Translations under genes and position numbers: made by a program | The notes under the pieces: generated by a model | What the model was told of the DNA's origin: nothing | Databases searched by the model: none | What the model saw: only the letters and a program-made list of their open reading frames with translations | Virus record (IMG/VR): IMGVR_UViG_3300025121_000282 | Coordinates: 1-64,000 of that record | DNA: 64,000 nucleotides | Direction: 5' to 3' (one strand) | Shown here: positions 24,999-40,677 of the stretch, in pieces | Position numbering within the stretch: position 1 is the stretch's first letter | Layout of the letters: each line of letters opens with the position of its first letter

Positions 24999-27900
24999 AT
25001 GGATGTCTTTTCGGATTTAATTAGAGACATAGTTTCAAAGTCTAAATCGTCTGTAGTAATAGAACAAAAACAAGAATCTGTGGTGGAATTTGTTGAGTCC
25101 TCTTGGGGGCTAAATTATAGACTGTTTCCAGGGCAGCGTTTTATTCTTAAGTTGTTTTATGATGAACCGTTAGACAACACAGAAAAAACTATACCAATAC
25201 CTGATCCTTTTACGGGACAAGTAAAAGAATGGTACTCAGAACAAGGGTATCTGGATCACTTATTTAGTAGTAAAAGAACTAATATAAAAAACACTGGTGG
25301 GGGCAAAAGAAACATACTAGTGCTCCCGATTGGCCGCCGAGGCACCAAATGTCTACGACCTGAAACACTAATTTATACTGATCATGGTATTTTACCTATC
25401 GGTTCTTTTGGTGATTTGTCAGGACCAGAAGTTCAGCCACTAAACATTACTGTAGTTAAACAAAACAGAAATACTGCTAAAACATCTAATTTCTACAATC
25501 CCGGTATTCTTAAAACCATAGACGTCAAAACACACTGTGGGTATGTTTTGGGTGGTTCTGAATCTCATCGTGTTAAGGTGTTATACCCAGATGGCAAAAT
25601 TGATTGGAAGTGTTTCCAAGACTTACAAGTTGGAGACAGGGTCGGCGTTCATCGAGGACCAGATCTATGGGGCCCTGGAGTAGATTTAACGCCACACCAC
25701 CCGATTTGGCGTTCAGATAACATCCGGTCTAGTGTCCCTCAATACCTAGATGAAGACTGGGGTCTGTTGCTGGGGTATTTGGTTGGAGACGGCACTTGGA
25801 CCCGCAAGTCATGGTTACAAATAACTACTTCGGGACAGATGATTGGGTCTGCTGCTGCATTGTGTTATAAGCTTTTCGGACGATGCACTGTCAAGGCATA
25901 CACCGACAGAAACTGTTCAGATATCAGAGTACACTCTAAGCCTATTCGTGAATTTTTAAACAGGTTGGGTTATACCTGGAATTCTAAGCCTAATACTAAA
26001 CACGTGCCCTGGGTCATTATGCAATCGCCTAAGGCAATAGTGGCTGCTTTTCTTAGAGGATTGTTTGAAGCAGATGGCTATTGTTCGGGTAGAAAAGTAG
26101 GGTTCACTTCTGCGTCATGGCAGTTAGCTCACGAAGTTCAAATGTTGTTGTTGAACTTTGGGGTTATAAGCAGACTTTATGTTGGAAACAGGTATAAAGG
26201 CAAAGACTACTACACTGTTAAGTTGATGGGTCGTCGTAGTCGCAGAATTTTTGCTGATGAGATTGGTTTTGCTACTCCATGCAAGGATGATGGTTTAAGC
26301 ATAAATGTAAATTATCATCAAGACTCGAATGGGAGTATTGAAGCCGTTCCTTTCCAAAAAATTTGGTTGCAACGGTGGCGTGATTCCATACCGTCATCAC
26401 ACGAACTGGCTGGAATACCCAGTGGCACTACCACCAATAAACTAGGATGGGAAAAGTCTAAGCTGCGTAAGATTTTAGGGAATAGCTTAAAAGCATCTAG
26501 TACAGAAAATGTGTCGTACACTAAGTTGCACAAAGCAGTGTCAGAGGGATGGTTAGATAAATGTAGGGATTTGGAAGTTAGGGCCCACTTTGAACATCTG
26601 CTTGAATCGGATTTATATTGGGACACAATTACTGAGACTTCTCATAGTGAAGCTCATTTATGTGACATTGAAGTTCCTGATGGGCATGACTACTCAGCGG
26701 GCGGATTTATAAATCATAACAGTGAAATAGCAGCACTTTGTGCTGTCTACGAAACTTGGAAGCTACTCCAAAAGAATGACCCCCAGAAGTATTATGGTCT
26801 GCCCCCGGGTGAATTTATAGAAATTATTGTTGTGGCCACCGAAAAGGAACAGGCGGCAACTATCTTTGCCCGCGCCGCCGCTCGTTTTGAAGGGAACCCA
26901 TATTTTAAGCCGTACATAGTTTCTCAGACTTTAACATTTATGAAATTTAGGACGCAGGCCGACATCGATAAACGGGGACCCAGAGCGAGAGCGTCTATAA
27001 AGGTCTCTTTTAGAGCTTGCAACGCCAAATCCTTGCGTGGTAAGGGGTACATAGTAGTAATACTGGACGAATTAGCCTTTTGGGAAGCAGAAGGCGGTTC
27101 GAGCCCCGATAAGGTCTGGACAGCAGTAACACCAGCTACTAAAACTTTTGCTCCTAAAGATCCTGAGGACGCCAGAATACCTATAGGCCCATCGGATGGC
27201 CGTATTATATGCATCTCATCCCCTATGAACAAAGCTGGCAAACTTTATGAATTATATGAAGATGGAATGAAGGGTGACCCTGATACCCTTGTGGTCCAAA
27301 CCCCTACGTGGGAGGTCAACCCAACCATACCACCTAAAGAGTACATAAGTGAACGTCACAAAATGGGCCCCGCCTTTTGGTGCGAGTGGGGTGGTGAGTT
27401 CTCTACACGAGTAAAGGGGTGGATAGAAAGAGAAGCAGACTTAGTAGACTGCATTAAAGACCCAAGTAGAAAACCTACCCACCGCGGTGCGGTCCGAGTG
27501 CCACACTACCTGGGCCTAGACTTAGGCTTGAGTGCGTTTCAAGATGGTACTGGTATTGCGGTGTCCCATGTGGACGGGGACATTATAGTTTTGGACGAAG
27601 TGATCGAAATTACTGCAGGCCTGGGCAGATACGAGCATAGAGAAAGACTGGACGTAGAGGAAGACATATACCCCATTATTGCTGATTTATGTGACCGGTT
27701 TATGGTAGTATCTGGTCTTTTTGACCAGTTTAATGGGTACCTTCTAGAACAGTTCTTACACCAAAAGAAACTAAAACAACTTAAAGTTGAACACATTACC
27801 CAAGAATTGCGCTCTAAAATGTACCAGAGATTTAAGCTCTTTATGTATGACAAAAAAATTGATCTACTCAATTTTCCACTACAAGATAGCCTGGATGGCC

Positions 27901-28199
27901 AACCACAGAAATTTTGTAAGTACATTAACGAACTGTTGGAACTTGAAGCTGAGAGAAAAAGTTACTCCATTGTGCAGGTTGGTCATCCAAAGCTTGCTGG
28001 GAAGCACGACGACATGTCAGATGCCATTATGAGATCAGTGTGGCTGGCTTCTGATCACGTTGGTACTTCATCAATCTCTGCACCCAGAATCATAGCTAAC
28101 TCTGGGAATCACCACAGTACTCTTGCCGCTCACAAAAGAAAATTAGCCTTTGGTCCTAGGAATCCCAGGATGGTACCACTTTCAAGGTTTGGCAGATGA
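24999..28199 (+). CDS. terL: terminase large subunit containing an intein
   Basis: Walker A 'GRRGTK|S' interrupted by an intein, Walker B 'VVILDELAF', motif III 'ISSP', nuclease 'LGLDLG' and 'HDDMSDA'. Confidence 0.93.
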   Translation: MDVFSDLIRDIVSKSKSSVVIEQKQESVVEFVESSWGLNYRLFPGQRFILKLFYDEPLDNTEKTIPIPDPFTGQVKEWYSEQGYLDHLFSSKRTNIKNTGGGKRNILVLPIGRRGTKCLRPETLIYTDHGILPIGSFGDLSGPEVQPLNITVVKQNRNTAKTSNFYNPGILKTIDVKTHCGYVLGGSESHRVKVLYPDGKIDWKCFQDLQVGDRVGVHRGPDLWGPGVDLTPHHPIWRSDNIRSSVPQYLDEDWGLLLGYLVGDGTWTRKSWLQITTSGQMIGSAAALCYKLFGRCTVKAYTDRNCSDIRVHSKPIREFLNRLGYTWNSKPNTKHVPWVIMQSPKAIVAAFLRGLFEADGYCSGRKVGFTSASWQLAHEVQMLLLNFGVISRLYVGNRYKGKDYYTVKLMGRRSRRIFADEIGFATPCKDDGLSINVNYHQDSNGSIEAVPFQKIWLQRWRDSIPSSHELAGIPSGTTTNKLGWEKSKLRKILGNSLKASSTENVSYTKLHKAVSEGWLDKCRDLEVRAHFEHLLESDLYWDTITETSHSEAHLCDIEVPDGHDYSAGGFINHNSEIAALCAVYETWKLLQKNDPQKYYGLPPGEFIEIIVVATEKEQAATIFARAAARFEGNPYFKPYIVSQTLTFMKFRTQADIDKRGPRARASIKVSFRACNAKSLRGKGYIVVILDELAFWEAEGGSSPDKVWTAVTPATKTFAPKDPEDARIPIGPSDGRIICISSPMNKAGKLYELYEDGMKGDPDTLVVQTPTWEVNPTIPPKEYISERHKMGPAFWCEWGGEFSTRVKGWIEREADLVDCIKDPSRKPTHRGAVRVPHYLGLDLGLSAFQDGTGIAVSHVDGDIIVLDEVIEITAGLGRYEHRERLDVEEDIYPIIADLCDRFMVVSGLFDQFNGYLLEQFLHQKKLKQLKVEHITQELRSKMYQRFKLFMYDKKIDLLNFPLQDSLDGQPQKFCKYINELLELEAERKSYSIVQVGHPKLAGKHDDMSDAIMRSVWLASDHVGTSSISAPRIIANSGNHHSTLAAHKRKLAFGPRNPRMVPLSRFGR
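25350..26720 (+). mobile_element. intein (457 aa) with LAGLIDADG homing endonuclease in TerL
   Basis: Starts CLRPET after the Walker A Lys; motifs 'LLGYLVGDG' and 'FLRGLFEADG'; ends 'GGFINHN' followed by Ser. Confidence 0.95.
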
Positions 28200-28378: not shown

Positions 28379-28709
28379 CATCCAAGAATTAAACAACATC
28401 TTGGCAAGTATAAATGACATGTCTGCCAAGGCCCTAACTTTGTCTAGGGTACTTTTGGCCGAGGCCAAAGCATCTGATGATGCCACTACTGTAATACAAA
28501 CAAATATGTACGTAAGAATGCTGTCTGCAATGTTAAGTGGCTTGTCTAAACTTAGTCGCCACAAAATCTCTCCCATAAATGTACCCAATTATGTAAAAAA
28601 TGCCAGAGACAAAATGTTTTGGGTAGAAGCCAGAAGAATAGCATACAGCAAAAACAAAACTTCTGAAGTAGAAATTGAAAAGATATGGAAGGGGCTGACT
28701 CGTGCCTAA
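28350..28709 (+). CDS. hypothetical helical protein (start possibly ATG at 28371)
   Basis: Fills the gap to the portal gene. Confidence 0.6.
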   Translation: MLRMFCHMSNIQELNNILASINDMSAKALTLSRVLLAEAKASDDATTVIQTNMYVRMLSAMLSGLSKLSRHKISPINVPNYVKNARDKMFWVEARRIAYSKNKTSEVEIEKIWKGLTRA

Positions 28710-30363
28710 AAGTACAGATCAAGAAGGGCGCGTCGTCCGCACCATACTAACAAGTAATGTGAAAGTTGGCAAACCGTCTCGTAAAAACAGGCTAGCTGCC
28801 AACATCTCTATGGCGCAGAATTCTCAGTTCTATGATACTATCATGTCTGCGGACATGCTCGAATTGCCTCAACCGGGGCAAAACGAAGCCGCTGTAATCA
28901 GACACTTTTATGAGTATGACGAGTATGTTGGTGCTGCCATCGATATGCACACTCAGCTGCCTCTTTCAAAAATTAGGCTAGAGCAAGCTGAGTGCCCTGA
29001 TGTCGAGTTGTCTGAGAAGTCTTACAGATTTTTTTTTAAAATGTGTAAACGTATAAAATTGTTTAAACGTCTGGTTTCTATACTATTTGATTATAATCTC
29101 CATGGTGAGGCAGTTGTATGGGCGGAGGACAGTGCTGACTCTATGCCGTTAGACGTGCGGCACACAACCGAAAGATACATAAATGACTACGGAAAACCTG
29201 TAGAAGAACACATTGTTAGAGACGATGCGGACACTAGAGAAGTAGAGTGGTACAAAAAACATTACAAGGGTTGGGACAAAATTACCACTCTCCCACCTGA
29301 GTGTGTAGAAATAAAAACGTTTCCGTTTTCTAATTTTTCTTCAATAACCATACTACACGATGACCAGACGCGGGCTTTGGTTAACAGGGCTGACATAGAC
29401 CCGGTTTCCGCTCAGGCATACGATGCAATACCCCAAGAACTTAGACCCTATTTGACAGAATCAGATAGGATTCCACTTGGTACCGACCCGAATAAGGGGT
29501 CGTTTGTTTATCACCTAGCCAGGGCAAAATCTGATTATCAAGAACGTGGAGTACCTGTACTTAGGCGATGCCTGAAAACGTTAATTTATAGGGATAAGTT
29601 ACGTCAGGCCCAAACTCAGATCGCTTCCAGAGCTATGACCCCTAAGAGACTGATTTGGGCGGAAGACCTAAGCCCAGAACAGTTGGAAGACCTTCGGGAT
29701 CAGGTGGACATGTCCCTGATGGACCCTGATTTTAGTATTATCACCAACTATCAAGTCAACTGGGAGGAGTTAGGGGCTAGAGACCGTCTTTTAGACTTAG
29801 CATCGGAAGACGAATCCGCAAATAAAAGACTGGTGGCTGGACTCGGTATTACTGAGGGACTGATCACCGGAGAGGCCACCTACTCCGGTGACCGTATGCC
29901 CATAGAGGCAATCAACACCAAGTACATGCTTTTGCGTGAACACATTCAAGAGTATGTTCACGACTATTTATTTGAGCCCATAGCCAGAAAAAAGGGATTT
30001 GTATACATTGACGAGGACGGTGATGAGATAGCGGTGTACCCCACTATTGGGTTCACACGTATGGCACTCACTGATTCTCAGGATGCATATGACAAGCTTT
30101 ATAACCTGTACCAAAAGGGCTCCATTCCAATTAGTGTGATTTTAGACTTGCTTAACATTGAGCCTAGATACGCCAGAAAACAGTTGGAACAAGACCTGTT
30201 TACAGTAAATGACCCCAACTTCAACGAGGTACTCCGCTCCCTGTATGGAGAAATTGGTAGAGCTTTGGTGGAACAGTCTAATGCTGTAGCCAAAACGTCA
30301 GAATACCTTTCTTTGAAGCCTATAGCAAAAGAAGGGTCAGAAGAAGATAACAGGTTCAAGTAA
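28702..30363 (+). CDS. portal protein
   Basis: 553 aa, largely helical, in the canonical position between terL and the protease/capsid genes; 'EYVGAAIDMHTQLPLS' and 'GVPVLRRCLKTL' resemble large-phage portals. Confidence 0.72.
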   Translation: MPKSTDQEGRVVRTILTSNVKVGKPSRKNRLAANISMAQNSQFYDTIMSADMLELPQPGQNEAAVIRHFYEYDEYVGAAIDMHTQLPLSKIRLEQAECPDVELSEKSYRFFFKMCKRIKLFKRLVSILFDYNLHGEAVVWAEDSADSMPLDVRHTTERYINDYGKPVEEHIVRDDADTREVEWYKKHYKGWDKITTLPPECVEIKTFPFSNFSSITILHDDQTRALVNRADIDPVSAQAYDAIPQELRPYLTESDRIPLGTDPNKGSFVYHLARAKSDYQERGVPVLRRCLKTLIYRDKLRQAQTQIASRAMTPKRLIWAEDLSPEQLEDLRDQVDMSLMDPDFSIITNYQVNWEELGARDRLLDLASEDESANKRLVAGLGITEGLITGEATYSGDRMPIEAINTKYMLLREHIQEYVHDYLFEPIARKKGFVYIDEDGDEIAVYPTIGFTRMALTDSQDAYDKLYNLYQKGSIPISVILDLLNIEPRYARKQLEQDLFTVNDPNFNEVLRSLYGEIGRALVEQSNAVAKTSEYLSLKPIAKEGSEEDNRFK

Positions 30364-31465: not shown

Positions 31466-32032
31466 GTGGAAACACCCGCACCCAATGATGAGTACCATCC
31501 CGATTCCAGAGAATTGGGGAACCATTATAATGTGGGTGATTTTGTAGCTAGACAATTACCTGATGGCGGTATCACTGACGTAGTTGGCGTAATCACCGCC
31601 GTTCTCCGTAAAATTGGATTTGTAGACGTAGAGTTTCCTACAGGAAATGAGCGGATTTCCATTGTAGAAGTGTGGAAAGTACCTAAGGACTCCATATTTT
31701 ATGCCCCCGCTACGCTGAACACTTCCATGGAAACATGGGACACCTCTATGTCTAGATATCTAGATGGGGTTAATTCTGGGTATAGCTACGCTCACCCAAG
31801 AGTTAGCAGTGTTGTTTCGAAGCACATGTTTCGTACATACAGCCCTGTAGTCTCCTTTATTAAAAGGGCTTTCTCAGCGGGGCTTTCTTCAAAACAGATA
31901 ACTGATGTGCTTGGGCGTGTTTTACCTTCCAATTCATTTGTTGAAATGCAAGAATTGGTCGCACACGTCCATGGCGAAGTCTTTAGAAGCAAATTGCCTT
32001 TACTCCAAATGGATAATATAACGGTGAGTTAA
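31466..32032 (+). CDS. hypothetical head-module protein with SH3/KOW-like N-terminal fold
   Basis: 'VGDFVAR...GVITAV...VDVEFP'; coupled to the protease gene. Confidence 0.55.
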   Translation: METPAPNDEYHPDSRELGNHYNVGDFVARQLPDGGITDVVGVITAVLRKIGFVDVEFPTGNERISIVEVWKVPKDSIFYAPATLNTSMETWDTSMSRYLDGVNSGYSYAHPRVSSVVSKHMFRTYSPVVSFIKRAFSAGLSSKQITDVLGRVLPSNSFVEMQELVAHVHGEVFRSKLPLLQMDNITVS

Positions 32033-33498
32033 TGGGGTTTATACGAACGGCTGAAGCTGCTGTCATACACACGGGCTGGACTCGTGAGCAGTGGGGTCGT
32101 ATTCGTGACGAGGCAAAAGACCAGGGCGGCAATGACCGTTTGGCCTCCGTTAATGAAGAATTTAGGCACTTTGACCCTAGCAAGTATTTGTTATCTCATC
32201 TAACAATAATGTGTTCTGTTGATGTGGAAGAGTCTCCACTACCGTTAGGTAAATTCAACTCTTCAAAAATAAAGTCTTCTTCGCTAACTAAGTTTCTACC
32301 CGGCTACGGCATAACTAATCGCAATTTCTCAGATTTTTTAGTTAAGCCTGAACACTCTAAGTACGTGAATGGCAACGGTGACTGTTGGGAACGGAAGCTT
32401 TTACTCTCTGCGTACAAGACCTTTATAGGCGGGGCAAACTATTATGAACACTTACAGGTCCCGGAATTAAATAAGGGCATAATAGTAGATGCTGTCGCTC
32501 GCGATGTCGGGGACACAATTTACATCGACCTGTTGAAAGCAACTGATCGTAAGCACACATATATAACAGAAGACCTTGAGTCGGATGTGCTTAATACAGC
32601 AAGTATGGGGTGTAACGCTTCCTTTGCTATTTGTACTAGATGTGGAAACGTTGCTATAGAAGACACGGACGTCTGTGATTGCGTGTCTCAGGGCTATAAG
32701 CTCAGTTATTACACTGACAACGACATTCGCAGGATCGTGGCTGAGCTAATAGGCCACTGGTCCGACCCCAATTCTTGTGTATTTTTTGAGTCGTCATGGG
32801 TTCGCAATCCAGCCTTTAAAGGCGCTGTAAAACGCAAAATTTTGACCCCACTTGAGGTAAACTCCTCCTCTGGTGTCCCTATCACATTTCCCGAACTAAG
32901 GGTAGCCTCTTTAACGGCCACTCGGTCGGCCCGAGTTGCTAACTTAATGTGGCCCCTACTTGTTGGAAATGTTATGGCCGATGGTACTCCTCAAAAAGGA
33001 CAAGACACTCGGCCCGATGCTCTTAAAAAGTTATACCCACAAAAAACTGCCCCTCCTGCTGAACCCGTTGTGGAGGAGCCTGAGGAATCAGACCCATCCA
33101 CTAAAGAGGAACCAGCACCTCCTCCTGAAGATATTGCCCCGCAGCAGGAGGAGTCTGTAGACCCTCCTGTGGCTGAGCCAGAGCCAGAGCCTGTTGAAGA
33201 CAGGTCCCCCGTTGAGTTGGACATACAGGATGCCAAAGACGCTCTTCGTCAGACGCTCCTGGAGCAGGTTGTAGACGAACTCACAGACAAAAATAAAAAA
33301 GAGTACGTCCCTGATCCTAACCAAGATAACAATCTGTTTGCTACTGTAGCATTGAAGCACATAAATCGTGGTAGAGTAGCCTCAGTTTTGTTTAAATCTG
33401 AAAATGATGTGCATACCACTAAGTACATACAAGCCTTAGCATCAAAGATTGGTGCAGTGCACACCTCCAGACAACCGTCTGGAATTAGACGCCCGTGA
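32032..33498 (+). CDS. prohead (maturation) protease, HK97/herpes assemblin-like, with zinc-ribbon insert and acidic Pro-rich tail
   Basis: His 'YYEH', Ser 'TASMGC', 'ICTRCGN..CDC' insert and 'FESSWVRNPAF' (ExSxVxxPA-type motif). Position before the scaffold and capsid genes. Confidence 0.78.
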   Translation: MGFIRTAEAAVIHTGWTREQWGRIRDEAKDQGGNDRLASVNEEFRHFDPSKYLLSHLTIMCSVDVEESPLPLGKFNSSKIKSSSLTKFLPGYGITNRNFSDFLVKPEHSKYVNGNGDCWERKLLLSAYKTFIGGANYYEHLQVPELNKGIIVDAVARDVGDTIYIDLLKATDRKHTYITEDLESDVLNTASMGCNASFAICTRCGNVAIEDTDVCDCVSQGYKLSYYTDNDIRRIVAELIGHWSDPNSCVFFESSWVRNPAFKGAVKRKILTPLEVNSSSGVPITFPELRVASLTATRSARVANLMWPLLVGNVMADGTPQKGQDTRPDALKKLYPQKTAPPAEPVVEEPEESDPSTKEEPAPPPEDIAPQQEESVDPPVAEPEPEPVEDRSPVELDIQDAKDALRQTLLEQVVDELTDKNKKEYVPDPNQDNNLFATVALKHINRGRVASVLFKSENDVHTTKYIQALASKIGAVHTSRQPSGIRRP

Positions 33499-33515: not shown

Positions 33516-34454
33516 ATGTCTGATCGTAATCGTTCCACCTGGAGCCGGGCGGCTGCAACCAATCGTCAGGCCGACCCGTTCACAATGAACCAGACTCGCG
33601 TTCAGCCCAGTGAGGATGCCTATGCAAATGGGGACCCGTCAACTTGGGGTGAAGATGTGGACCACAGCAACATGTGGAAGAATGAGACACGTAATGAGAT
33701 CGGCCAGCCTGTGCCGCACTCTAACGTGATAGATTCCGCGCTGCAGGTAGAGGAAGCTGCCCGTGTTGCTGCCCAGAAAGCGGCAACAGCGGCAACTACT
33801 CCTCCCCCCGTAGACCCCACCATTTTTCAGTATCACCTGAAGAGAGCAAAGCTCGCAACTATGATTGCAGAGTCTATGCTTCCTGGTGGCACCTCCGACG
33901 AGGTTGTTGTGGCCTCAGCCGGACATCTGATGTACCTCCCGGACACGGCTCTTGCAGGGCTGAGAGAAGTTCAGCGTAATGCTGGTCTGGTTAAGTATGC
34001 CAAGGAAGAGGCACCCGCTCCCGAGGCTCCCGCTCCCGAGGTTGTGGCACCCGCTCCCGAGGCTCCCGCTCCTGTGAATGCCTCAATGGACTTTGACGCA
34101 GAATTAGAAGCAGCACTTTTTGCTGGTACAGAAGAAGGTCAGGGCGGAGATAATGGTATAGAACTGCCCTCTTGTGATCTTGGCCTTGAAGACCCGGCCG
34201 AGGGTGTAGACCCAATTATAGCAGCACTGTTTGAGCAGGCACTACCCGCCCCCGTAGTGCGTGCGGCCTCGGTTACTCGGACAGCTTCCCAACAGCCCCA
34301 GGCCCCTGCTACGCCGCAGCGGCTGGGTGCGGCGCCCAGAGCGAGAATGGCCTCTGGGGACGCAAACAGAGCGTCAGCTGACCTTTCGGCCCTTTGGAGT
34401 TCAGAGCCCGACGTGTCAGCCCACTTTGGGACCCCCATCAGCATCAAAGACTAA
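33516..34454 (+). CDS. probable capsid scaffolding protein
   Basis: Ala/Pro/Glu-rich low-complexity protein between the protease and the decoration/capsid genes; strong GGAG ribosome-binding site. Confidence 0.6.
   Translation: MSDRNRSTWSRAAATNRQADPFTMNQTRVQPSEDAYANGDPSTWGEDVDHSNMWKNETRNEIGQPVPHSNVIDSALQVEEAARVAAQKAATAATTPPPVDPTIFQYHLKRAKLATMIAESMLPGGTSDEVVVASAGHLMYLPDTALAGLREVQRNAGLVKYAKEEAPAPEAPAPEVVAPAPEAPAPVNASMDFDAELEAALFAGTEEGQGGDNGIELPSCDLGLEDPAEGVDPIIAALFEQALPAPVVRAASVTRTASQQPQAPATPQRLGAAPRARMASGDANRASADLSALWSSEPDVSAHFGTPISIKD
34011..34072 (+). repeat. 26-bp direct repeat (period 36) encoding APAPEAPAP
   Basis: gcacccgctcccgaggctcccgctcc at 34011-34036 and 34047-34072. Confidence 0.9.
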
Positions 34455-34477
34455 ATAGAACTCAATCATAGCTAGCA

Positions 34478-34526
34478 GCTGAGGCCAACTTTCCGTAACA
34501 AGGAAGTTGGCCTCAGCCGTATTTGG
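34478..34526 (+). terminator. GC-rich hairpin with GTATTTG tail after the scaffold gene
   Basis: Perfect 14-bp inverted repeat gctgaggccaactt (34478-34491) / aagttggcctcagc (34504-34517), followed by cgtatttgg. Confidence 0.65.
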
Positions 34527-34618
34527 ATATCAAAGTTGGCCCAAACCTCGTTAAACCTTAAATCAAATGTTAGGTGTTAGGTGTTCATACCGTACTTGTA
34601 GTTTAAGGAGAATCAAAA

Positions 34619-35239
34619 ATGGCAGGTCAGTCTAATGCTGATTTCAAGGGAAGCAGCGATCGACTTCGAATTTTGTATCGAGGCCACTCGAATTCTAGTT
34701 CGAAGCTAACGGAAGATGCTTACACTAACACCAACCCTCCGATTGCGGCGCTTGCTGGAGTTGCCAGCAGCACCCTGACCGGAATCACCAAGACTGGTGT
34801 TCTTGGCTCCTCGGTGGCTGTCACCCGTCCGGATGCTGGTGGTGGCTACATTGGTGGCCCTCCGTCAAATGAGGCTCTCGAAGGCAACTTCCGCCCCCTC
34901 GGTCTCTTCCGTCGTGACGCCAATGGCCTCCCGAATGAGAACGACCCGGGCGTTGCATCGGAAAAGACTGCTTACCTCCACGGCGGTGGCCAGTATGGAT
35001 GCCAGTTGTACGAATCCAAGATTCTAAACACTGGCGCCGCACTTTCGCCGTCTTGGACCAGTGGTGTTCTGGTTTATTGCTCCCGCAATGGTCTCATCAC
35101 CACGCTGGACAACGCCAACAACACCCTGGAGCGGGTTGCTGCTCACAGCATGTCTCCTGCCACTGGCACCGTGATGGGCGTGGTTCTTATGGGCCCGACT
35201 TCGGCAATTGCTGAGGTTACGCTCGACCTTCACGTTTAA
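34619..35239 (+). CDS. putative head decoration/cement protein (paralogue 1)
   Basis: Gly-rich beta protein upstream of the capsid gene with an AAGGAG ribosome-binding site; clearly homologous to the next ORF. Confidence 0.6.
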   Translation: MAGQSNADFKGSSDRLRILYRGHSNSSSKLTEDAYTNTNPPIAALAGVASSTLTGITKTGVLGSSVAVTRPDAGGGYIGGPPSNEALEGNFRPLGLFRRDANGLPNENDPGVASEKTAYLHGGGQYGCQLYESKILNTGAALSPSWTSGVLVYCSRNGLITTLDNANNTLERVAAHSMSPATGTVMGVVLMGPTSAIAEVTLDLHV

Positions 35240-35250
35240 TTGGAGGTCAC

Positions 35251-36036
35251 ATGAGCTACTTTGGAATCTCAAATCAGGATTTTAAGGGGCTAGCCGGTCG
35301 GCTTCGCATCCTTTATCGGGGCCATGGCAACTGCATGGCAGTCCTGGTGGATGACGCCTACACCCAGGCTAACCCGGGTCAGGCCATCGTATCAGATGAA
35401 GCCACCCCCACTTCCAGCACCTTGACGGGTGTTACGAAGCGTGGTGTGCTTTCTGGTTCGGTAGCTTTCACTCGTCCTTCCACATCAGGCAACGTGGCTG
35501 TGGATAACATGGTAGGTGGCCCTCGTCGTCGTGGTGGTTCCAGCATCGGGGCCGCTAACGCTGAACAGGCCGTAGATGGCACCAACGCCCACGCAGAAGA
35601 TGCACGGACGCACGTAATTGGCCTGTTTATCAACGATGCAATGGGCAACCAGAGCTTCGACAATCAGGCAGGCGTTGCATCGGGTAAGATTGCGTATCTT
35701 TCTGGTCCCGTTGGGTCGGTGGGCGTCCAGGTCTACGAGACCCGGCAGCAAATTGACTGGGCCCGTGGCGGGGCTGGGGCGGCTGTCTCTTGGGGCAGTG
35801 GTCAGTATGTGTACGGGTCTATAAACGGACTTGTCACCAACCTTGTTCGTGATGCTCTGGAGTCCTATTCCACTGGCGTACTGAATGATGCCGGTAATGG
35901 ACTTACTGATGCAGCCGGTGGAGCAGTGGCCGCTCCGTCAGTGTCCATCATGGGAACCACTAAGTTCGGGCCTACTGCGGCTTTGCCAGAGGTCTGTTTT
36001 GACATGCGCTTGTTCAAGTACCGTACGGTCGCTTAA
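35251..36036 (+). CDS. putative head decoration/cement protein (paralogue 2)
   Basis: Shares 'DFKG...RLRILYRGH', 'STLTG(I/V)TK.GVL' and 'GVAS.K.AYL' with 34619..35239; GGAGG ribosome-binding site. Confidence 0.6.
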   Translation: MSYFGISNQDFKGLAGRLRILYRGHGNCMAVLVDDAYTQANPGQAIVSDEATPTSSTLTGVTKRGVLSGSVAFTRPSTSGNVAVDNMVGGPRRRGGSSIGAANAEQAVDGTNAHAEDARTHVIGLFINDAMGNQSFDNQAGVASGKIAYLSGPVGSVGVQVYETRQQIDWARGGAGAAVSWGSGQYVYGSINGLVTNLVRDALESYSTGVLNDAGNGLTDAAGGAVAAPSVSIMGTTKFGPTAALPEVCFDMRLFKYRTVA

Positions 36037-36061
36037 TCTTAATCAGTAGAGGTAAAAGAAA

Positions 36062-36937
36062 ATGTCAGTAAGTAACGCAGTGAAGCAGCAGAAGATTGCT
36101 GAACTCATTGGATCTCAGGGCGGCCGTGACATTATCGCCCGTTCAATGATTCAGCCCCTTCGGTCCCGTCGTGACTATTTCGCTGTAGGGCGTAAGTCAC
36201 TCCACGTCGAGCAGCTTCCCGATGGTGCGCTCCCGATTTATGACAAGGATGTGGACGTCGTCGCCTACATCGTGTCGGAAGAGGGTGATAACATCGTTGC
36301 TGTGCAGAAGCCTCGCCGGGTTCATTTCCCGACCTTCGAGATTGCTGCCAACCCTGAGATTCCCCTGTCTCAGATCCGCCAGCGCCGGTTCGACGTGATC
36401 GACCGGTCGCAGGACGCGGCCAGAAGCCAGATTCAGGCTGCTGAAGACCAGCGGTACTTTGCTACCCTGGATTCGGTTGCTGTTGACGGCTACGACAATG
36501 TGTCGGGCTCGGCTGCACGTGACGTTCAGGTCATTGCTCCCATCTCCCCCAGCGTTCTTGCTGAGGCCTTCTCGGAGATTGAGCAGAACGACCTCCAGGT
36601 CAGCCGGATGTTCTTCAATGCGAAGGACTACAGCGACGTCCGCAAGTTCGGCAGAGACATCCTGGACATCGAGTCCCAGGCCGTCCTGCTGAAGACCGGT
36701 CTGATGGCGCAGCTTTGGGGCGCGCAGATCATGATCAGCCGACTGGTCCCCCAGGGCTTCGTTTATATCGTCTGCGAGCCGCTGTACTTGGGGAGAATGC
36801 CAGTACGCACAGAACTCACCGTAATATCCGCTGATGACCCTAGACGCCGTATGATAGGCTTCTCGGTCTTCGAAGAGATTGGCATTGGCGTGTATAACCC
36901 CGCTGGCGTCACCCGTCTCGTGGTACAGCGCGGTTAA
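36062..36937 (+). CDS. major capsid protein (HK97-like fold, no delta domain)
   Basis: 291 aa with the strongest C/G-ending codon bias in the window; 'VEQLPDGALPIYDKD' and 'FPTFEIAANPEI' resemble large-phage capsid proteins. Last gene of the head operon, followed by a hairpin. Confidence 0.8.
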   Translation: MSVSNAVKQQKIAELIGSQGGRDIIARSMIQPLRSRRDYFAVGRKSLHVEQLPDGALPIYDKDVDVVAYIVSEEGDNIVAVQKPRRVHFPTFEIAANPEIPLSQIRQRRFDVIDRSQDAARSQIQAAEDQRYFATLDSVAVDGYDNVSGSAARDVQVIAPISPSVLAEAFSEIEQNDLQVSRMFFNAKDYSDVRKFGRDILDIESQAVLLKTGLMAQLWGAQIMISRLVPQGFVYIVCEPLYLGRMPVRTELTVISADDPRRRMIGFSVFEEIGIGVYNPAGVTRLVVQRG

Positions 36938-36971
36938 TCTCAGCGGTCTTCCAGACCGTTTTTCGTTCATA

Positions 36972-37018
36972 ATCAACCCGAGGAGCCCGTTAAAGTTCCT
37001 CGGGTTGATGTGTATTTG
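36972..37018 (+). terminator. hairpin with GTATTTG tail after the capsid gene
   Basis: 13-bp inverted repeat atcaacccgagga (36972-36984) / tcctcgggttgat (36997-37009), followed by gtgtatttgg. Confidence 0.7.
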
Positions 37019-37020
37019 GG

Positions 37021-37170
37021 ATTCTTGTTAGTACTTTATACCAATCTTGGCTATATGTCTATTATGTTGTTTAAAGACACTTTCTTGTTACTAGGTTATA
37101 TGTCCCCAACTCGGTGTTAGTTCTTTGTTATTGTTCTGAGTGTTACTAGGCCGTATGCCTATTTAAACTT
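37021..37170. repeat. imperfect direct repeats in a T-rich intergenic region
   Basis: ttcttgtta at 37022 and 37082; tgttactagg at 37085 and 37141; tatatgtc at 37052 and 37097. Confidence 0.55.
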
Positions 37171-37255
37171 AGTACAAATTATTTTATCTCTCCAAAGACA
37201 ACAAGACCAATAATTATTTTGTGGGTACTGTCTGTACTATTGTTTATTTTTTATA

Positions 37256-37285
37256 TTGCGCTGAGCAGCCCCGATCTTGTATAAT
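37256..37285 (+). promoter_or_regulatory. candidate sigma70-type promoter
   Basis: TTGCGC (37256-37261), an 18-nt spacer, then TATAAT (37280-37285), with an AT-rich upstream tract; 30 nt before the ATG. Confidence 0.45.
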
Positions 37286-37315
37286 GTTGTAACACAGCAT
37301 AGGAAATAAACAAAA

Positions 37316-40189
37316 ATGACTGATTACCAACAATTGTTAATTGCTGCAGGCATTACTCCGGGTACTATCCATGAACTGTACCTAAAGCACACAGATGTGG
37401 AATTGGCAGCCCAGGCTTCTGTGTTTGACCAGATAGTCCCGGAACATGTGGTGGCTTATTGGCGTAAAAAATGGGGCGTGAAGACTCTAACCTTTCGTCA
37501 GCGTAGAGACCTGGGCAAAGGTATACCAGACATTTCTGGACTCACTAAAGAGAAGTTTCTGGAGTTACATACCAATTTTGGAGACACTCAAATTGCCAAA
37601 ATTTATAACATCAGTAAACAGGGTATAGCCAAGCTTAGACAGCGATATGGCATTGCAGCCGTCAGTTATGAGAAGAGAATTAACCCAACAGACGAACTTA
37701 CTGATTTTCAGAAAGCCGTAATTATTGGAACATCTTTGGGAGATGGCCACATTACTGCGTCAGGATGTTTAAAGTTAGATCACTCTGCGGCTCAAATGAA
37801 TTACATCAAATTCAAACACGGTGTAGTTGCAAATATTTCTAAACGATTGCAATACTTTGAAGGAGATAGATTTAGAGAATACTTGACTTATGGGTTCACT
37901 TTCGTGACCTCTCCACACTCATGGGTAAAGGAGCTTCGTTCTATTTTGTACCCAGATGGAATCAAAGTTTTTCCATTGGATGTAATTGCTAGTTTGAAGC
38001 CTGTCTCTTTAGCTATGTGGTATTTTGACGATGGTCACTATGAAGACTATCCTAGTATTGCGATGGGACTGGCTACTTTGACTGATGTAGACAACGCTAT
38101 TGTTGGATTAGACACAGCCTTTGGTCTTAAAACGTATCTTTCTCCACGATCTTTACCCAATTGCCATGTTCTTCAGTTCAGAGCAGAGTCTAGTGATAGA
38201 CTATTTGAGTTAGTAGCTGAGTTTGCTACTCCAGATGTTGCCCACAAGATCCCTAAAAAATTTTGGCCTATTAAAATCGACTTACCTAAATACAAGGTTA
38301 CCAGAGAGGAGCTTCAGGTATCTAATGACCTGCAGAAGAAGTCTAAGTCTTGGCTCACAATGACTGAGGCAGAACAAGCAGAGCACACAAATAACGTTTT
38401 TCTTGGGTGGAGAGAAGTTGGTTTTCCTTTTCAGACTCCTAAATCAGAAGAGCTTCAAACCATCGTTGGTTTAGAAGACTATCAGATTTTAGACGAAGAT
38501 ACGATCAAAGCTTGCCAAGTTGGGCAAAGTATATGTCAAGCTTTCATGCCCCACATTTGGGGTCAAAAACCCATTGATTCTACTTACTCTATTAAAGAGA
38601 TTTTTGATGATGATCACATGTTTAAAACCGTTATTGTCAAATCTTTAAATGAAAAGAAGTCTGTTACAGCTGGTGCAATTAGAAGTTCTTTGCGTTCATA
38701 TCGCCGTTCAGGCTTATACAATTTTCGCCCAGCAGCTGCCCGTGTGTTGGTAGATAAGTATTGCGTTTCTGGCGGTACTGTATTTGACCCCTGTGCAGGG
38801 TGGGGTGGCAGACTTTTAGGTGTATTGCTATCTGAACAGAGGGTCAATTATGTGGCCTGTGAGCCTAGCTCTGCTACTTTTAATGGTTTAAATGAACTGA
38901 CCAATTGGTTGCAAGAGCACGGGGTAAATGCCAACAATCGCGTTCATTTGCACAACACCCCAATAGAGGACTTCATAGTTCCGGATGGCATAGACCTTAT
39001 TCTGACCTCCCCTCCATACTGGAAAAAAGAAATTTATTCAGACGAACCAACCCAATCTAGTATTAGGTATACTACTTATTCTGACTGGTTGGATCGATTT
39101 TTGAAACCGTTGATTGAGAATTCTTGGAAGAAACTCAATGCTGGTGGCCACATGATTTTGAATGTAGACGATTTTAATTTAAATAAGGAAACTTACAACT
39201 TAGTAGAGGATACTCAACGAATTGCGACTCAAGTTGGGTGCGGCTCTCCAATATCAATTTTTAAATATGACATGGCTTCTTATGGTGTAGAAAATTTTGA
39301 GTCGGTTTTAATATGGCAGAAAGAATCTGGGGTTGTACTTCCATTCCATACTAGACCTAAAGTCAAGTGTCAGCACTGTGGTGGTGATTTTGAAGCTAGA
39401 GCCGGCAAACAATTTTGCTCTACTTTGTGTCGAGTAAAAGGACATCGTCATAATTCTAAATTGCAATCTGACACAGCCAAATTTTGGGCATTGGACGAGT
39501 ATACCCGTTCTATTACAGATAAGTGTAGGTCTTGTGGATTTTATAAACTAAAATCTAATCTTTTGGGTCATGTATGTTCTGACTGTTCTGTTTTACCTCA
39601 TAACCCCAAGAAAATTTGCAAATTTTGTTCAAACCCGTTTCAAGCCGAAAATCTTACTCATCAATACTGTACTGAAGCCTGTTATAAAAAATACCGCAGA
39701 CGTGAATATCGAAAAACAGTTCCTGCTAAAACAACTCGCACAGCCAAATGTCAAATTTGTGAGAACGAATGGGAAGTCCCAGCAACAGGTGGGTGGCCTA
39801 CTAAATGTGATCAGTGTAAGAATCAATCTGATTTAGACGATCGGAAACGAGTTTGTCAGTATAGACATTGCAACACTGAATTTGTAGACACCTCTAAGTT
39901 TCAGGGTATGCATTTTTGTTCACCTGAACATCGAGGTGCCGAAAAACGCATACGTTCAGGTGCAACTGCTGATGTGCCCCCTAAGGATCTCGTTATTGGT
40001 CGTCAACGCAGTAAATGTATGCTGTGTAAACAGCCATTTCTGCTTAATGGAACTAAAAATACTCGTTGTGATGATTGTAAGGTAAAGACCAGAACTAAAC
40101 AGTGTTTGCGGTGTAGCAATCCTTTTATTGATGACAGTGCAAATAACACGTGCAAATTTTGTATTGTTTGCACTAAAATTTCACGTTAA
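37316..40189 (+). CDS. HTH + LAGLIDADG endonuclease + amino-DNA methyltransferase + multiple zinc-finger fusion
   Basis: HTH 'DTQIAKIYNISKQGIAKLR'; LAGLIDADG motifs 'IIGTSLGDG' and 'AMWYFDDG'; MTase 'FDPCAGWGGR' and 'LTSPPY'; about seven CxxC...C(x)xxC motifs at the C-terminus. Confidence 0.85.
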   Translation: MTDYQQLLIAAGITPGTIHELYLKHTDVELAAQASVFDQIVPEHVVAYWRKKWGVKTLTFRQRRDLGKGIPDISGLTKEKFLELHTNFGDTQIAKIYNISKQGIAKLRQRYGIAAVSYEKRINPTDELTDFQKAVIIGTSLGDGHITASGCLKLDHSAAQMNYIKFKHGVVANISKRLQYFEGDRFREYLTYGFTFVTSPHSWVKELRSILYPDGIKVFPLDVIASLKPVSLAMWYFDDGHYEDYPSIAMGLATLTDVDNAIVGLDTAFGLKTYLSPRSLPNCHVLQFRAESSDRLFELVAEFATPDVAHKIPKKFWPIKIDLPKYKVTREELQVSNDLQKKSKSWLTMTEAEQAEHTNNVFLGWREVGFPFQTPKSEELQTIVGLEDYQILDEDTIKACQVGQSICQAFMPHIWGQKPIDSTYSIKEIFDDDHMFKTVIVKSLNEKKSVTAGAIRSSLRSYRRSGLYNFRPAAARVLVDKYCVSGGTVFDPCAGWGGRLLGVLLSEQRVNYVACEPSSATFNGLNELTNWLQEHGVNANNRVHLHNTPIEDFIVPDGIDLILTSPPYWKKEIYSDEPTQSSIRYTTYSDWLDRFLKPLIENSWKKLNAGGHMILNVDDFNLNKETYNLVEDTQRIATQVGCGSPISIFKYDMASYGVENFESVLIWQKESGVVLPFHTRPKVKCQHCGGDFEARAGKQFCSTLCRVKGHRHNSKLQSDTAKFWALDEYTRSITDKCRSCGFYKLKSNLLGHVCSDCSVLPHNPKKICKFCSNPFQAENLTHQYCTEACYKKYRRREYRKTVPAKTTRTAKCQICENEWEVPATGGWPTKCDQCKNQSDLDDRKRVCQYRHCNTEFVDTSKFQGMHFCSPEHRGAEKRIRSGATADVPPKDLVIGRQRSKCMLCKQPFLLNGTKNTRCDDCKVKTRTKQCLRCSNPFIDDSANNTCKFCIVCTKISR

Positions 40190-40242
40190 CTATTCTTTTA
40201 CCCTTTTTATGCCCGTGTTAGTTTAACTACATAGGTTTTACC

Positions 40243-40677
40243 ATGACTACCATTGCAGATGCCATTTTAAGAGTAGCTTCGGTTTTACAAATCTCTGCTG
40301 ATAAACCTGTTGACAGGCTGCAAGTTATAATAGACAAAATTACTGAAGAGATGAAGATCAGTGACAACCCTGGTCTTGAACGTTTTCCAGCCGTTGTACG
40401 GTATCTAAGAGACCACAGAACGTCTGAATCCCTAGCCACAGACGTTCTGCATAAGATGTTCCCTAAAGACATGTCCCGTGATGTCAAGAACACTGTGTAC
40501 ACCAATAGGTACAACCCTAAAGTTGGTGACCATGTTAAGATTGTTGGTGGCAACTACAATGGGCATGTTGGTACCGTTCAAAGCCTGCACGAAGACAAAG
40601 TTATAATTGTTCTCAATAAACCAGTTACTGTTACGTATCATTCAGTATCAGTCCCTGACGTTTACATACATCGATAA
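40243..40677 (+). CDS. KOW-motif protein
   Basis: C-terminal 'KVGDHVKIVGGNYNGHVGTVQS'; N-terminal 'ILRVAS'. Confidence 0.65.
   Translation: MTTIADAILRVASVLQISADKPVDRLQVIIDKITEEMKISDNPGLERFPAVVRYLRDHRTSESLATDVLHKMFPKDMSRDVKNTVYTNRYNPKVGDHVKIVGGNYNGHVGTVQSLHEDKVIIVLNKPVTVTYHSVSVPDVYIHR

What the first reader, a model, noticed from the sequence alone, without database searches (positions are those of the whole stretch)
37316..40189. Homing endonuclease-DNA methyltransferase-zinc finger array in one polypeptide
One uninterrupted 957-aa frame contains an HTH, two LAGLIDADG motifs that both keep the catalytic Asp (SLGDG, YFDDG), an amino-MTase (DPCAGWGG then SPPY, suggesting N4-C or N6-A) and about seven Cys-rich fingers. 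No intein Hint motifs are visible. It has its own promoter candidate, looks AT-richer than the capsid genes, and sits where tail-completion genes often follow. Inference: either a selfish element that cuts empty alleles while methylating for self-protection (a single-chain restriction-modification-like homing unit), or an MTase steered to long targets.
Basis: partly seen in the sequence, partly recalled or inferred. Interest (0 to 1): 0.75.

Follow-up and report, generated by a model that had tools for sequence, protein, structure and literature searches.

The report
Homing endonuclease fused to DNA methyltransferase
A huge groundwater phage carries, right after its capsid gene, one long gene that joins an apparently intact I-SceI-type homing endonuclease to a DNA methyltransferase and seven zinc fingers; close relatives of this cassette are gained and lost like selfish mobile genes, so it looks like a mobile nuclease gene with a fused, probably useful, methylase.

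Summary
ORF 37316-40189 (957 aa) is contiguous in independent assemblies. It encodes two HTH repeats, an I-SceI-like LAGLIDADG domain, a helical adaptor, an amino-methyltransferase (motif I then SPPY) and seven Cys-rich zinc units. No intein signature was found.

All four I-SceI active-site residues (D143, K217, D239, K311) and the methyltransferase motifs are kept in about 99% of 134 fusion relatives.

The gene sits in a polymorphic slot just after the major-capsid-gene terminator of phage-G-like huge phages. Relatives carry there nothing, a free-standing HTH-LAGLIDADG gene, endonuclease-methyltransferase fusions, or zinc-finger-methyltransferase genes.

In a sister lineage the fusion gene is a clean 2,562-bp indel between otherwise identical genomes, with diverged flanks only next to the junction. 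That is a homing signature.

For the window's own lineage, mobility is only inferred:
- its GC3 is at the 0.9th percentile of the genome;
- it is five times less diverged than the capsid gene between two strains.

Best reading: a free-standing homing-endonuclease gene translationally fused to a (probably N4-cytosine) DNA methyltransferase as cargo. Methylation-based self-protection is possible but untested.

An in-frame LAGLIDADG domain has been noted once before, in an unrelated actinophage methylase family. I found no description of this family. I rate it a new variant of a known kind.

The parts
36062..36937 (+). Major capsid protein gene. It is the conserved neighbour whose 3' end and terminator border the cassette slot, and it is a plausible region for the endonuclease target.
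   Evidence: phrog_2522 major head protein, E 4e-51. The same capsid family lies 100-250 bp upstream of nearly all related cassettes.
36942..37009 (+). Two terminator-like hairpins (36942-36960 and 36972-37009) ending the capsid transcription unit. In relatives the cassette junction lies just after the equivalent hairpin.
   Evidence: Junction seen in L096/L098.
37281..37286 (+). TATAAT -10 hexamer about 30 nt before the start codon, with a weak -35 (TTGCGC, 18-nt spacer). AGGAAA ribosome-binding site at 37301-37306.
   Evidence: Read from the sequence. Not called by the sigma-70 scan.
37316..40189 (+). Whole ORF, 957 aa: HTH x2, LAGLIDADG, helical adaptor, methyltransferase, zinc-finger array.
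37343..37666 (+). Two HTH-like helical repeats (about aa 10-56 and 72-117).
   Evidence: Alignment A1. HTH_23/Sigma70_r4 hits in relatives. AF2 helices. No Pfam hit in the window protein itself.
37694..38260 (+). I-SceI-type monomeric LAGLIDADG endonuclease domain (aa 127-315). Catalytic D143 is at nt 37742-37744 and D239 at nt 38030-38032. K217 and K311 align with I-SceI K122 and K223.
   Evidence: Pfam PF03161, 70.5 bits. Profile against PDB I-SceI, E 5e-25. Foldseek 1r7m, TM 0.76. Residue conservation.
38318..38695 (+). Helical adaptor / N-terminal extension of the methyltransferase (aa 335-460). It is also present in stand-alone relatives of about 340 aa.
38696..39325 (+). Rossmann-fold amino-methyltransferase core (aa 461-670). 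Motif X-like YNFRP at 468-472. Motif I DPCAGWGGR at nt 38786-38812. Motif IV SPPY at nt 39008-39019.
   Evidence: Hit to the beta-class methylase 2zie in permuted order. Model pLDDT 93.9.
39368..39430 (+). Extra FCS-like zinc unit (aa 685-705), specific to this phage. It is absent from 19 aligned relatives and has low model confidence.
39524..40162 (+). Array of six conserved zinc units (aa 737-949), alternating zinc-ribbon-like CxxC...CxxC units and CGNR/FCS-like CxxC...FCSxxC + Arg-rich units.
   Evidence: Invariant Cys in A1. zf-CGNR is sub-threshold here at 17.9 bits and above threshold in relatives. Unit coordinates.

Best explanation
The gene is a free-standing homing-endonuclease gene that has become translationally fused to a DNA methyltransferase.

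Shown:
- The N-terminal third (two HTH repeats plus an I-SceI-type LAGLIDADG domain) has a complete active site.
- The middle is a gamma-ordered amino-methyltransferase with SPPY. It is a circular permutation of PF01555-type N4-C/N6-A DNA methylases.
- The C-terminus is a seven-unit zinc-finger array.
- The cassette occupies a slot just downstream of the major-capsid-gene terminator. That slot is polymorphic across phage-G-like huge phages.
- A sister fusion cassette moved recently between nearly identical genomes, together with short diverged flanks.

Inferred:
- During co-infection the endonuclease part cuts cassette-less relatives near the capsid gene's 3' end. Recombinational repair then copies the whole cassette in.
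- The methyltransferase part, probably an N4-cytosine enzyme, modifies the phage DNA. This may give an anti-restriction benefit and possibly also immunity to the cassette's own nuclease.
- The zinc fingers and HTH repeats add DNA affinity.
- Fusion to a useful enzyme would explain why both active sites stay under purifying selection over deep divergence.
For: Domains and active sites:
- The endonuclease domain is homologous to I-SceI.
- In 134 fusion proteins, D143 is kept in 133, D239 in 134, K217 (K or R) in 132 and K311 in 133. The same four residues are kept in free-standing and fused relatives at the same slot.
- In the methyltransferase, D491, G495 and R499 are kept in 134/134 and S565 in 131/134; P566 (132/134), P567 and Y568 (134/134 each) are likewise kept. 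The hit to a beta-class DNA methylase is in permuted order.

The slot:
- In the MTase-anchored set, every locus whose match includes the LAGLIDADG part and that has upstream sequence lies just after this capsid gene.
- In a capsid-anchored sample of 52 loci, 26 have neither domain, 12 have a free-standing HTH-LAGLIDADG gene, 10 have fusions, 3 have a methyltransferase without LAGLIDADG and 1 has zinc fingers only.
- Phages with identical capsid proteins differ in what occupies the slot.

Recent movement in a sister lineage:
- L096 against L098 shows a 2,562-bp insertion replacing 17 bp, 72 bp after the capsid stop codon.
- Flank divergence is 12, 12 and 4% in the three 100-bp windows left of the junction and 10% in the 100 bp to the right. 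It is 0-1% for the next 800-1300 bp.
- Empty, free-endonuclease and fusion alleles occur in phages at least 97% identical upstream.

The window's own copy:
- Its GC3 of 33.2% is at the 0.9th percentile of the genome.
- Between two natural strains the cassette is five times less diverged than the capsid gene, all but one change synonymous (Fisher p 0.0035).
- It is the only LAGLIDADG_2 and the only PF01555 hit in the 315-kb genome.
Against: - No cleavage or methylation data exist.
- For the window's own lineage (the triple fusion) I found no empty/occupied pair with near-identical flanks.
- That clade has a uniform architecture and is monophyletic.
- Its endonuclease and methyltransferase domain distances co-vary (r 0.70-0.86, Mantel p 0.001). 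This also fits long vertical inheritance.
- An AU test did not reject congruence between the capsid tree and cassette distribution for L026 (p 0.79).
- The methyltransferase fold search cannot tell DNA from RNA or protein substrates.
- The window protein is borderline for the Pfam methylase threshold.
- The endonuclease target site is unknown.
Confidence: 0.55

Rival explanations
1. Single-chain restriction-modification-like unit. The methyltransferase methylates a base inside (or overlapping) the nuclease's recognition sequence, protecting the phage's own DNA. The LAGLIDADG nuclease cuts the unmethylated site in competing phages or the host. Spread of the cassette would then be a by-product of this self/non-self discrimination.
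For: - Both active sites are conserved together, and the two domains co-evolve as one unit.
- The domain order (nuclease, helical adaptor, gamma-ordered methyltransferase, C-terminal DNA-binding region) mirrors Type IIG/IIL enzymes. That resemblance rests on my own knowledge; HsdM-like structural hits appear.
- The fusion is stable over deep divergence.
Against: - Free-standing HTH-LAGLIDADG genes without a methyltransferase sit in the same slot, so immunity does not need methylation.
- Zinc-finger-methyltransferase genes without a nuclease also sit there, so the methyltransferase works without the nuclease.
- LAGLIDADG enzymes recognise their long sites through their own beta-saddle, so shared specificity with a short-site methylase is not expected.
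Confidence: 0.15
2. Domesticated LAGLIDADG domain. The nuclease fold serves only as a long-site DNA-binding module, together with the HTH repeats and zinc fingers, that places or tethers the methyltransferase. No cleavage and no homing occur in this lineage.
For: - The architecture is uniform and the pattern looks vertical in the triple-fusion clade.
- The methyltransferase core is combined with other DNA-binding modules (zinc fingers, ROS/MucR, HTH) in paralogues.
- WhiA is a precedent for LAGLIDADG domestication (PMC3384342).
Against: - The catalytic Asp pair and Lys pair are essentially invariant. WhiA lost all four (PMC3384342).
- The LAGLIDADG domain is about as conserved as the methyltransferase (50.5% against 53.2% mean pairwise identity).
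- Sister cassettes show recent mobility.
- The window gene is a compositional outlier in its genome.
Confidence: 0.15
3. Packaging- or head-associated nuclease/methylase. Being encoded beside the head module, the protein would cut or mark the phage's own concatemer, analogous to HNH-terminase partners or methylation-controlled pac cleavage. Alternatively it would be packaged and injected as an anti-defence 'polyvalent' protein.
For: - The gene lies next to the terminase, portal, protease and capsid module.
- Polyvalent multi-domain phage proteins that include methylases are known (PMC5512222, seen).
Against: - Half of the close relatives lack the gene at this slot, so it cannot be essential for packaging.
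- It is separated from the capsid gene by terminators and is followed by a replication module.
- Cultured relatives (phage G, Tunturi_5) have no such gene after the capsid gene.
Confidence: 0.05
4. Assembly or annotation artefact: two or three genes joined by an error.
For: None found.
Against: - Contigs from four runs in at least three studies cover the ORF with no indel or joint, including a strain variant with 13 substitutions.
- More than 50 homologues at 33-41% identity share the architecture.
Confidence: 0.01

Closest known systems
I-SceI and the LAGLIDADG_2 family (PF03161), monomeric double-motif homing endonucleases
   Same: Same fold (TM 0.76 to 1r7m). Two LAGLIDADG helices. Both catalytic Asp residues and both peripheral Lys residues align (I-SceI D44/D145/K122/K223).
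   Different: This one is not intron-encoded. It carries two N-terminal HTH repeats and is fused in frame to a methyltransferase and zinc fingers. Identity to I-SceI is about 20%.
Free-standing phage homing endonuclease genes (T4 seg/mob genes, 'intronless homing'; endonuclease genes next to essential phage genes, PMC10448857)
   Same: It lies between genes next to a highly conserved essential gene (the capsid gene). Presence/absence is polymorphic among close relatives. Flanks next to the junction look co-converted. It has a DNA-binding module plus a nuclease module.
   Different: The nuclease is LAGLIDADG rather than GIY-YIG or HNH. It carries a second enzyme in the same polypeptide.
Actinophage methylases with an in-frame LAGLIDADG domain (Taj_79 group; PMC9957025)
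   Same: A LAGLIDADG endonuclease domain and a DNA methylase in one ORF without an intein. The same two hypotheses were discussed there: a selfish insert, or a single-peptide restriction-modification enzyme.
   Different: The methylase family is unrelated, with no tblastn similarity. The Taj_79 domain is a 139-aa insert found in nine sequences. Here the module is a full I-SceI-like domain at the N-terminus, found in hundreds of clusters at a fixed slot after the capsid gene, with HTH and zinc-finger additions.
Type IIG/IIL single-chain restriction-modification enzymes (MmeI, BpuSI type) and HsdM-like gamma methyltransferases
   Same: The order is N-terminal nuclease, helical region, gamma-ordered amino-methyltransferase, C-terminal DNA-binding region. 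HsdM structures appear among the fold hits.
   Different: Those enzymes use PD-(D/E)XK nucleases and NPPY N6-adenine methylases with a shared target-recognition domain. Here the nuclease is LAGLIDADG with its own DNA-recognition surface, and the motif is SPPY.
PF01555 beta-class N4-C/N6-A DNA methyltransferases (e.g. T. thermophilus 2zie; N4-C methyltransferase 8s9n)
   Same: Sequence similarity in the motif IV-VIII block and in the FxP...DPxAGxG block. The SPPY tetrapeptide is typical of N4-cytosine enzymes (my own knowledge).
   Different: The two blocks are in the opposite order (circular permutation), and a helical N-terminal extension is added.
WhiA/DUF199 (domesticated LAGLIDADG plus HTH transcription factor)
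   Same: A LAGLIDADG fold tethered to HTH DNA-binding modules in a protein that is not intron-encoded.
   Different: [quoted passage not shown] This family keeps all four.

Membership tests
LAGLIDADG_2 / I-SceI-like homing endonuclease (protein family) | Profile match above the curated threshold | tested here: met
   PF03161 scores 70.5 bits against a cut-off of 25 and 73.9 bits in the genome search. The A1 profile hits I-SceI at E 5e-25.
LAGLIDADG_2 / I-SceI-like homing endonuclease (protein family) | Two LAGLIDADG helices, each ending in a catalytic acidic residue, plus flanking basic residues | tested here: met
   D143, D239, K217 and K311 align with I-SceI D44, D145, K122 and K223. They are kept in 132-134 of 134 relatives.
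LAGLIDADG_2 / I-SceI-like homing endonuclease (protein family) | [quoted passage not shown] | tested here: met
   AF2 pLDDT is about 90 over residues 130-310. Foldseek finds 1r7m, 5a0m and 6x1j with TM 0.74-0.76.
LAGLIDADG_2 / I-SceI-like homing endonuclease (protein family) | Site-specific double-strand cleavage | not testable with these tools
   Needs biochemistry.
Mobile (homing) free-standing endonuclease gene | Presence/absence polymorphism at one site among close relatives, with clean junctions | tested here: met
   Met for sister lineages: L096 against L098 (2,562 bp against 17 bp) and L112 against L147 (1,059 bp against 128 bp), with L153 (endonuclease) against L159 (UDG) as a replacement at the same slot rather than a clean indel. 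For the window's own lineage only cassette swaps at lower flank identity were seen (L018 against L051, 82%).
Mobile (homing) free-standing endonuclease gene | Co-conversion of flanking sequence | tested here: met
   In L096/L098, divergence is 10-12% within 100-300 bp of the junction and 0-1% beyond. This is the sister lineage, not the window's.
Mobile (homing) free-standing endonuclease gene | Evidence of horizontal movement of the window-type cassette itself | tested here: inconclusive
   GC3 is an outlier at the 0.9th percentile. The cassette is five times less diverged than the capsid gene between strains (p 0.0035). The AU test does not reject congruence (p 0.79).
Amino-methyltransferase of the N6_N4 DNA methylase group | Motif I (FxGxG-like SAM loop) and motif IV ((S/D/N)PP(Y/F)) | tested here: met
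   DPCAGWGGR at 491-499 and SPPY at 565-568, near-invariant in 134 relatives.
Amino-methyltransferase of the N6_N4 DNA methylase group | Profile match above the curated threshold | tested here: inconclusive
   26.5 bits against 26.7 by hmmscan, and 28.1 bits, over the cut-off. Relatives score 32-67 bits. The A3 profile hits 2zie at E 1.5e-11.
Amino-methyltransferase of the N6_N4 DNA methylase group | DNA (not RNA or protein) as substrate, and N4-C rather than N6-A | not testable with these tools
   Fold hits include Trm11, PrmC, TrmN6 and HsdM alike. N4-C is inferred from the Ser in SPPY and from weak hits to 8s9m/8s9n. The SAM complex job was not folded.
Type IIG/IIL restriction-modification enzyme | PD-(D/E)XK nuclease sharing one target-recognition domain with the methyltransferase | tested here: not met
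   The nuclease is LAGLIDADG. No PD-(D/E)XK domain was found.
Intein | Hint splicing blocks flanking the endonuclease | tested here: not met
   No Hint or Intein_splicing hit at E <= 1. The endonuclease domain is N-terminal to the methyltransferase, not inserted within it.
zf-CGNR zinc finger (PF11706) | Profile match above the curated threshold | tested here: not met
   15.7-17.9 bits against a cut-off of 24 in the window protein. Relatives reach 30-31 bits, so the resemblance is real but this copy is sub-threshold.

The most novel reading that the evidence does not exclude
This would be a LAGLIDADG-based 'homing with methylation immunity' system. The fused methyltransferase would methylate the endonuclease's own long recognition site, so the phage could keep the target sequence in its essential capsid region. 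The nuclease would destroy or convert unmethylated co-infecting relatives. That would make it the first restriction-modification-like system built on a LAGLIDADG nuclease, used in phage-against-phage competition.
Probability: 0.15. Interest if true: 0.85.

Novelty: new variant of a known kind. Interest (0 to 1): 0.6.

Why it matters
Homing endonuclease genes are usually seen as pure parasites that decay once fixed. Here an I-SceI-type nuclease has stayed catalytically intact while welded to a DNA methyltransferase across hundreds of divergent huge-phage lineages. Sister cassettes still move between genomes.

This offers a natural test of whether a selfish nuclease can stabilise itself by carrying a useful enzyme, or by methylation-based immunity.

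It marks the capsid-gene 3' flank as a hot spot for exchange of anti-defence genes in huge phages.

It provides a large, diverse set of compact I-SceI-like meganucleases with built-in HTH and zinc-finger modules and a permuted, probably N4-cytosine, methyltransferase for enzymology.

Tried and rejected
- NCBIfam gave no hit.
- A repeated TCTTGTTASTA motif in the upstream spacer is not enriched in the window (5 found against 2.85 expected).
- The SAM-methyltransferase complex prediction was not folded and is not evidence either way.
- A scan of capsid-gene nucleotide conservation for a hyper-conserved candidate target gave no signal. It was ungapped and anchored at the C-terminus, so the alignment was poor.
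- The AU test for incongruence between the capsid tree and the cassette (L026/L027) did not reject congruence (p 0.79). I therefore make no claim of horizontal transfer for the window-type lineage from trees.
- Foldseek on the methyltransferase model returns generic amino-methyltransferases and cannot assign the substrate.
- Literature searches found no description of this family. They found only the unrelated Taj_79 case.
- I first read the tight synteny with the capsid gene in methyltransferase-anchored loci as a vertically inherited core gene. The capsid-anchored sample overturned that.
- Megablast of 16 kb against cultured phages found nothing.
Full report
**The observation**

The window holds an uninterrupted ORF at 37316-40189 (+) of 957 aa.

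- Pfam finds LAGLIDADG_2 at residues 134-296 (70.5 bits against a cut-off of 25) and a borderline N6_N4_Mtase match at 559-672 (26.5 against 26.7 bits).
- PHROGs finds a LAGLIDADG homing-endonuclease family and several DNA-methyltransferase families. NCBIfam finds nothing.
- There are seven C4/C3H units between residues 685 and 949.
- No intein family is hit.
- Contigs from four runs in at least three groundwater or soil studies cover the ORF with no indel or joint. One of them is a strain variant with 13 substitutions. A join error is excluded.

**The nuclease domain**

- A profile of 20 homologues hits I-SceI at E 5e-25. The alignment places D143 on I-SceI D44, D239 on D145, K217 on K122 and K311 on K223.
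- The AlphaFold model has mean pLDDT 80.8, and about 90 over this domain. Its best PDB matches are I-SceI and I-WcaI, with TM 0.74-0.76.
- Across 134 fusion proteins down to about 25% identity, D143 is kept in 133, D239 in 134, K217 (K or R) in 132 and K311 in 133.
- The domesticated LAGLIDADG protein WhiA lost all four equivalent residues (PMC3384342). This domain therefore looks like a working nuclease rather than a mere DNA-binding scaffold.

**The methyltransferase**

- The order is motif X-like YNFRP, motif I, then SPPY, preceded by a helical extension (335-460). Stand-alone relatives of about 340 aa also have that extension.
- A profile of this region hits the beta-class Thermus modification methylase 2zie in two blocks in reversed order. 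The family is therefore a circular permutation of PF01555-type DNA amino-methyltransferases.
- A separate model of residues 330-682 is very confident (pLDDT 93.9, pTM 0.91).
- Fold searches return Trm11, PrmC, TrmN6 and HsdM alike. Structure therefore says 'exocyclic or amide N-methyltransferase' but not which substrate.
- I infer DNA and N4-cytosine from three things: the sequence kinship, the conserved Ser of SPPY (131/134), and the DNA-binding partners. This is not shown.

**The family**

- More than 50 full-length homologues at 33-41% identity occur on contigs of up to 528 kb, none of them named.
- An exhaustive search finds 278 cluster representatives at E <= 1e-30 and 2,610 at E <= 1e-10.
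- Among 204 collected proteins the commonest architectures are HTH-LAGLIDADG-methyltransferase, with or without a zinc-finger array. Stand-alone methyltransferases and zinc-finger-methyltransferase forms also occur. This set is biased towards fusions by the query.
- On a methyltransferase tree the triple-fusion type forms one clade (support 100). The window protein is its deepest branch.
- Endonuclease and methyltransferase domain distances co-vary: r 0.86 overall and 0.70 within the clade, Mantel p 0.001.
- The two domains are about equally conserved, at 50.5% and 53.2% mean pairwise identity.
- The fusion is therefore old and evolves as one unit.

**Context**

- The genome is a 314,886-bp virus record in which this is the only LAGLIDADG_2 and the only PF01555 match.
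- The gene follows the head module: terminase 24999-28199, portal 28702-30363, protease 32032-33498 and major capsid protein 36062-36937.
- Two terminator-like hairpins and a 300-bp AT-rich spacer with a TATAAT separate it from the capsid gene.
- SNF2 and DnaB-type helicase genes follow downstream.
- The capsid protein is related to those of Bacillus phage G (38%) and Tunturiibacter phage Tunturi_5 (42.5%). Neither has such a gene after its capsid gene.

**The slot is polymorphic**

- Loci fetched with the methyltransferase as bait nearly all have this capsid gene 100-250 bp upstream. I first read that as a core gene.
- Loci fetched with the capsid protein as bait overturn that reading. Of 52 with enough downstream sequence, 26 have neither domain, and Pfam on ten of these confirms other genes such as UDG. 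Twelve have a free-standing HTH-LAGLIDADG gene of 309-329 aa. Ten have endonuclease-methyltransferase fusions, two of them preceded by a free endonuclease gene. Three have a methyltransferase without LAGLIDADG, and one has zinc fingers only.
- On the capsid tree these states are scattered, and identical capsid proteins carry different states.
- A tree of the LAGLIDADG domains shows three lineages sharing the slot: the window type with a sister fused group, a 785-aa fused type, and a free-standing type. All keep the Asp/Lys/Asp/Lys set.

**Direct evidence of movement in a sister lineage**

- L096 (fusion) and L098 (empty) come from different samples. They differ by 2,562 bp against 17 bp, 72 bp after the capsid stop codon and just past the capsid terminator hairpin.
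- Divergence is 12, 12 and 4% in the three 100-bp windows left of the junction (the capsid 3' end and terminator) and 10% in the first 100 bp to the right. It is 0-1% for the next 800-1300 bp on each side.
- This is the pattern expected when a cassette is copied in, with short co-converted flanks, from a diverged donor.
- A third allele with a free endonuclease gene (L102) shares 98.7% identity upstream with L098.
- L112 against L147 gives a second clean indel; L153 against L159 is a replacement of an endonuclease gene by a UDG gene at the same slot.

**The window's own lineage**

I found no near-identical empty/occupied pair for this lineage. An AU test does not reject congruence between the capsid tree and the cassette distribution (p 0.79). 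Two indirect signals remain:

- The gene's GC3 is 33.2%, at the 0.9th percentile of 224 ORFs (median 46.7%).
- Between the window and a strain from another study, the capsid gene has 8 synonymous changes in 876 bp. The 2,874-bp cassette has 5 changes, 4 of them synonymous (Fisher p 0.0035). This suggests more recent common ancestry for the cassette than for its neighbour.

**Interpretation**

The best-supported reading is a free-standing homing-endonuclease gene fused to a DNA methyltransferase as cargo.

- Self-immunity by methylation (a restriction-modification-like unit) is not excluded. It is not needed, because endonuclease-only and methyltransferase-only genes occupy the same slot.
- Pure domestication as a DNA-binding module is disfavoured by the intact active site.
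- A packaging role is disfavoured because half of the relatives lack the gene.

**Prior knowledge**

- The library search found no description of this family.
- The nearest precedent is a 139-aa LAGLIDADG domain in nine actinophage methylases (Taj_79). Its authors raised the same two hypotheses and noted that LAGLIDADG enzymes have not been described in restriction-modification systems (PMC9957025).
- That methylase family shows no similarity to this one.
- Homing endonuclease genes clustering beside capsid and other essential phage genes is established (PMC10448857).
- I therefore rate this a new variant of a known kind. What is notable is its abundance, the intact dual active sites and the clear homing footprint in a sister lineage.

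Noticed in passing
window 33516-36937: The capsid block (four genes plus the major capsid gene) is 56-58% GC, with capsid-gene GC3 at 68%. The genome averages 47% and its neighbours here are 40-45%. GC is very patchy across the 315-kb genome.
   Followed up: partly
window 34619-35239 and 35251-36036: Two adjacent genes just before the capsid gene are paralogues (39% identity, E 1e-41) with no family hit. In phage G the gene at this position is annotated as capsid decoration.
   Followed up: partly
window 24999-28199: The terminase large-subunit ORF is 1066 aa, but terminase profiles cover only about residues 541-1015. The N-terminal half matches an unknown-function PHROG.
   Followed up: no
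window 36754-36766: In a strain variant (run X9), four synonymous changes cluster within 13 bp about 170 bp before the capsid stop codon. Overall the capsid gene is five times more diverged than the cassette.
   Followed up: partly
window 39368-39430 (aa 685-705): An extra FCS-like zinc unit is present only in this phage's protein. It is absent from 19 aligned relatives and is modelled with low confidence.
   Followed up: partly
L006 8932-10871: In a relative, an IS605-type TnpB/OrfB gene and a resolvase sit immediately downstream of the cassette. This is a second kind of mobile element at the same hot spot.
   Followed up: no
L013 1-10124: A 107-kb relative has a LAGLIDADG-methyltransferase fusion followed directly by a ROS/MucR-zinc-finger methyltransferase paralogue. 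An upstream 1067-aa gene has faint intein and LAGLIDADG_3 hits.
   Followed up: no
L001 7140-10829 (LR745208.1); L156/L157: One relative carries two HTH-LAGLIDADG modules in tandem within the same ORF (1229 aa). Others carry a free-standing endonuclease gene followed by an endonuclease-methyltransferase fusion.
   Followed up: partly
L159 6106-6768; L123 5957-6619: In some cassette-less relatives a uracil-DNA-glycosylase-family gene occupies the slot after the capsid gene.
   Followed up: partly
window 36000-40300 in public runs: The phage is found nearly identical in groundwater and soil metagenomes from at least four studies.
   Followed up: partly
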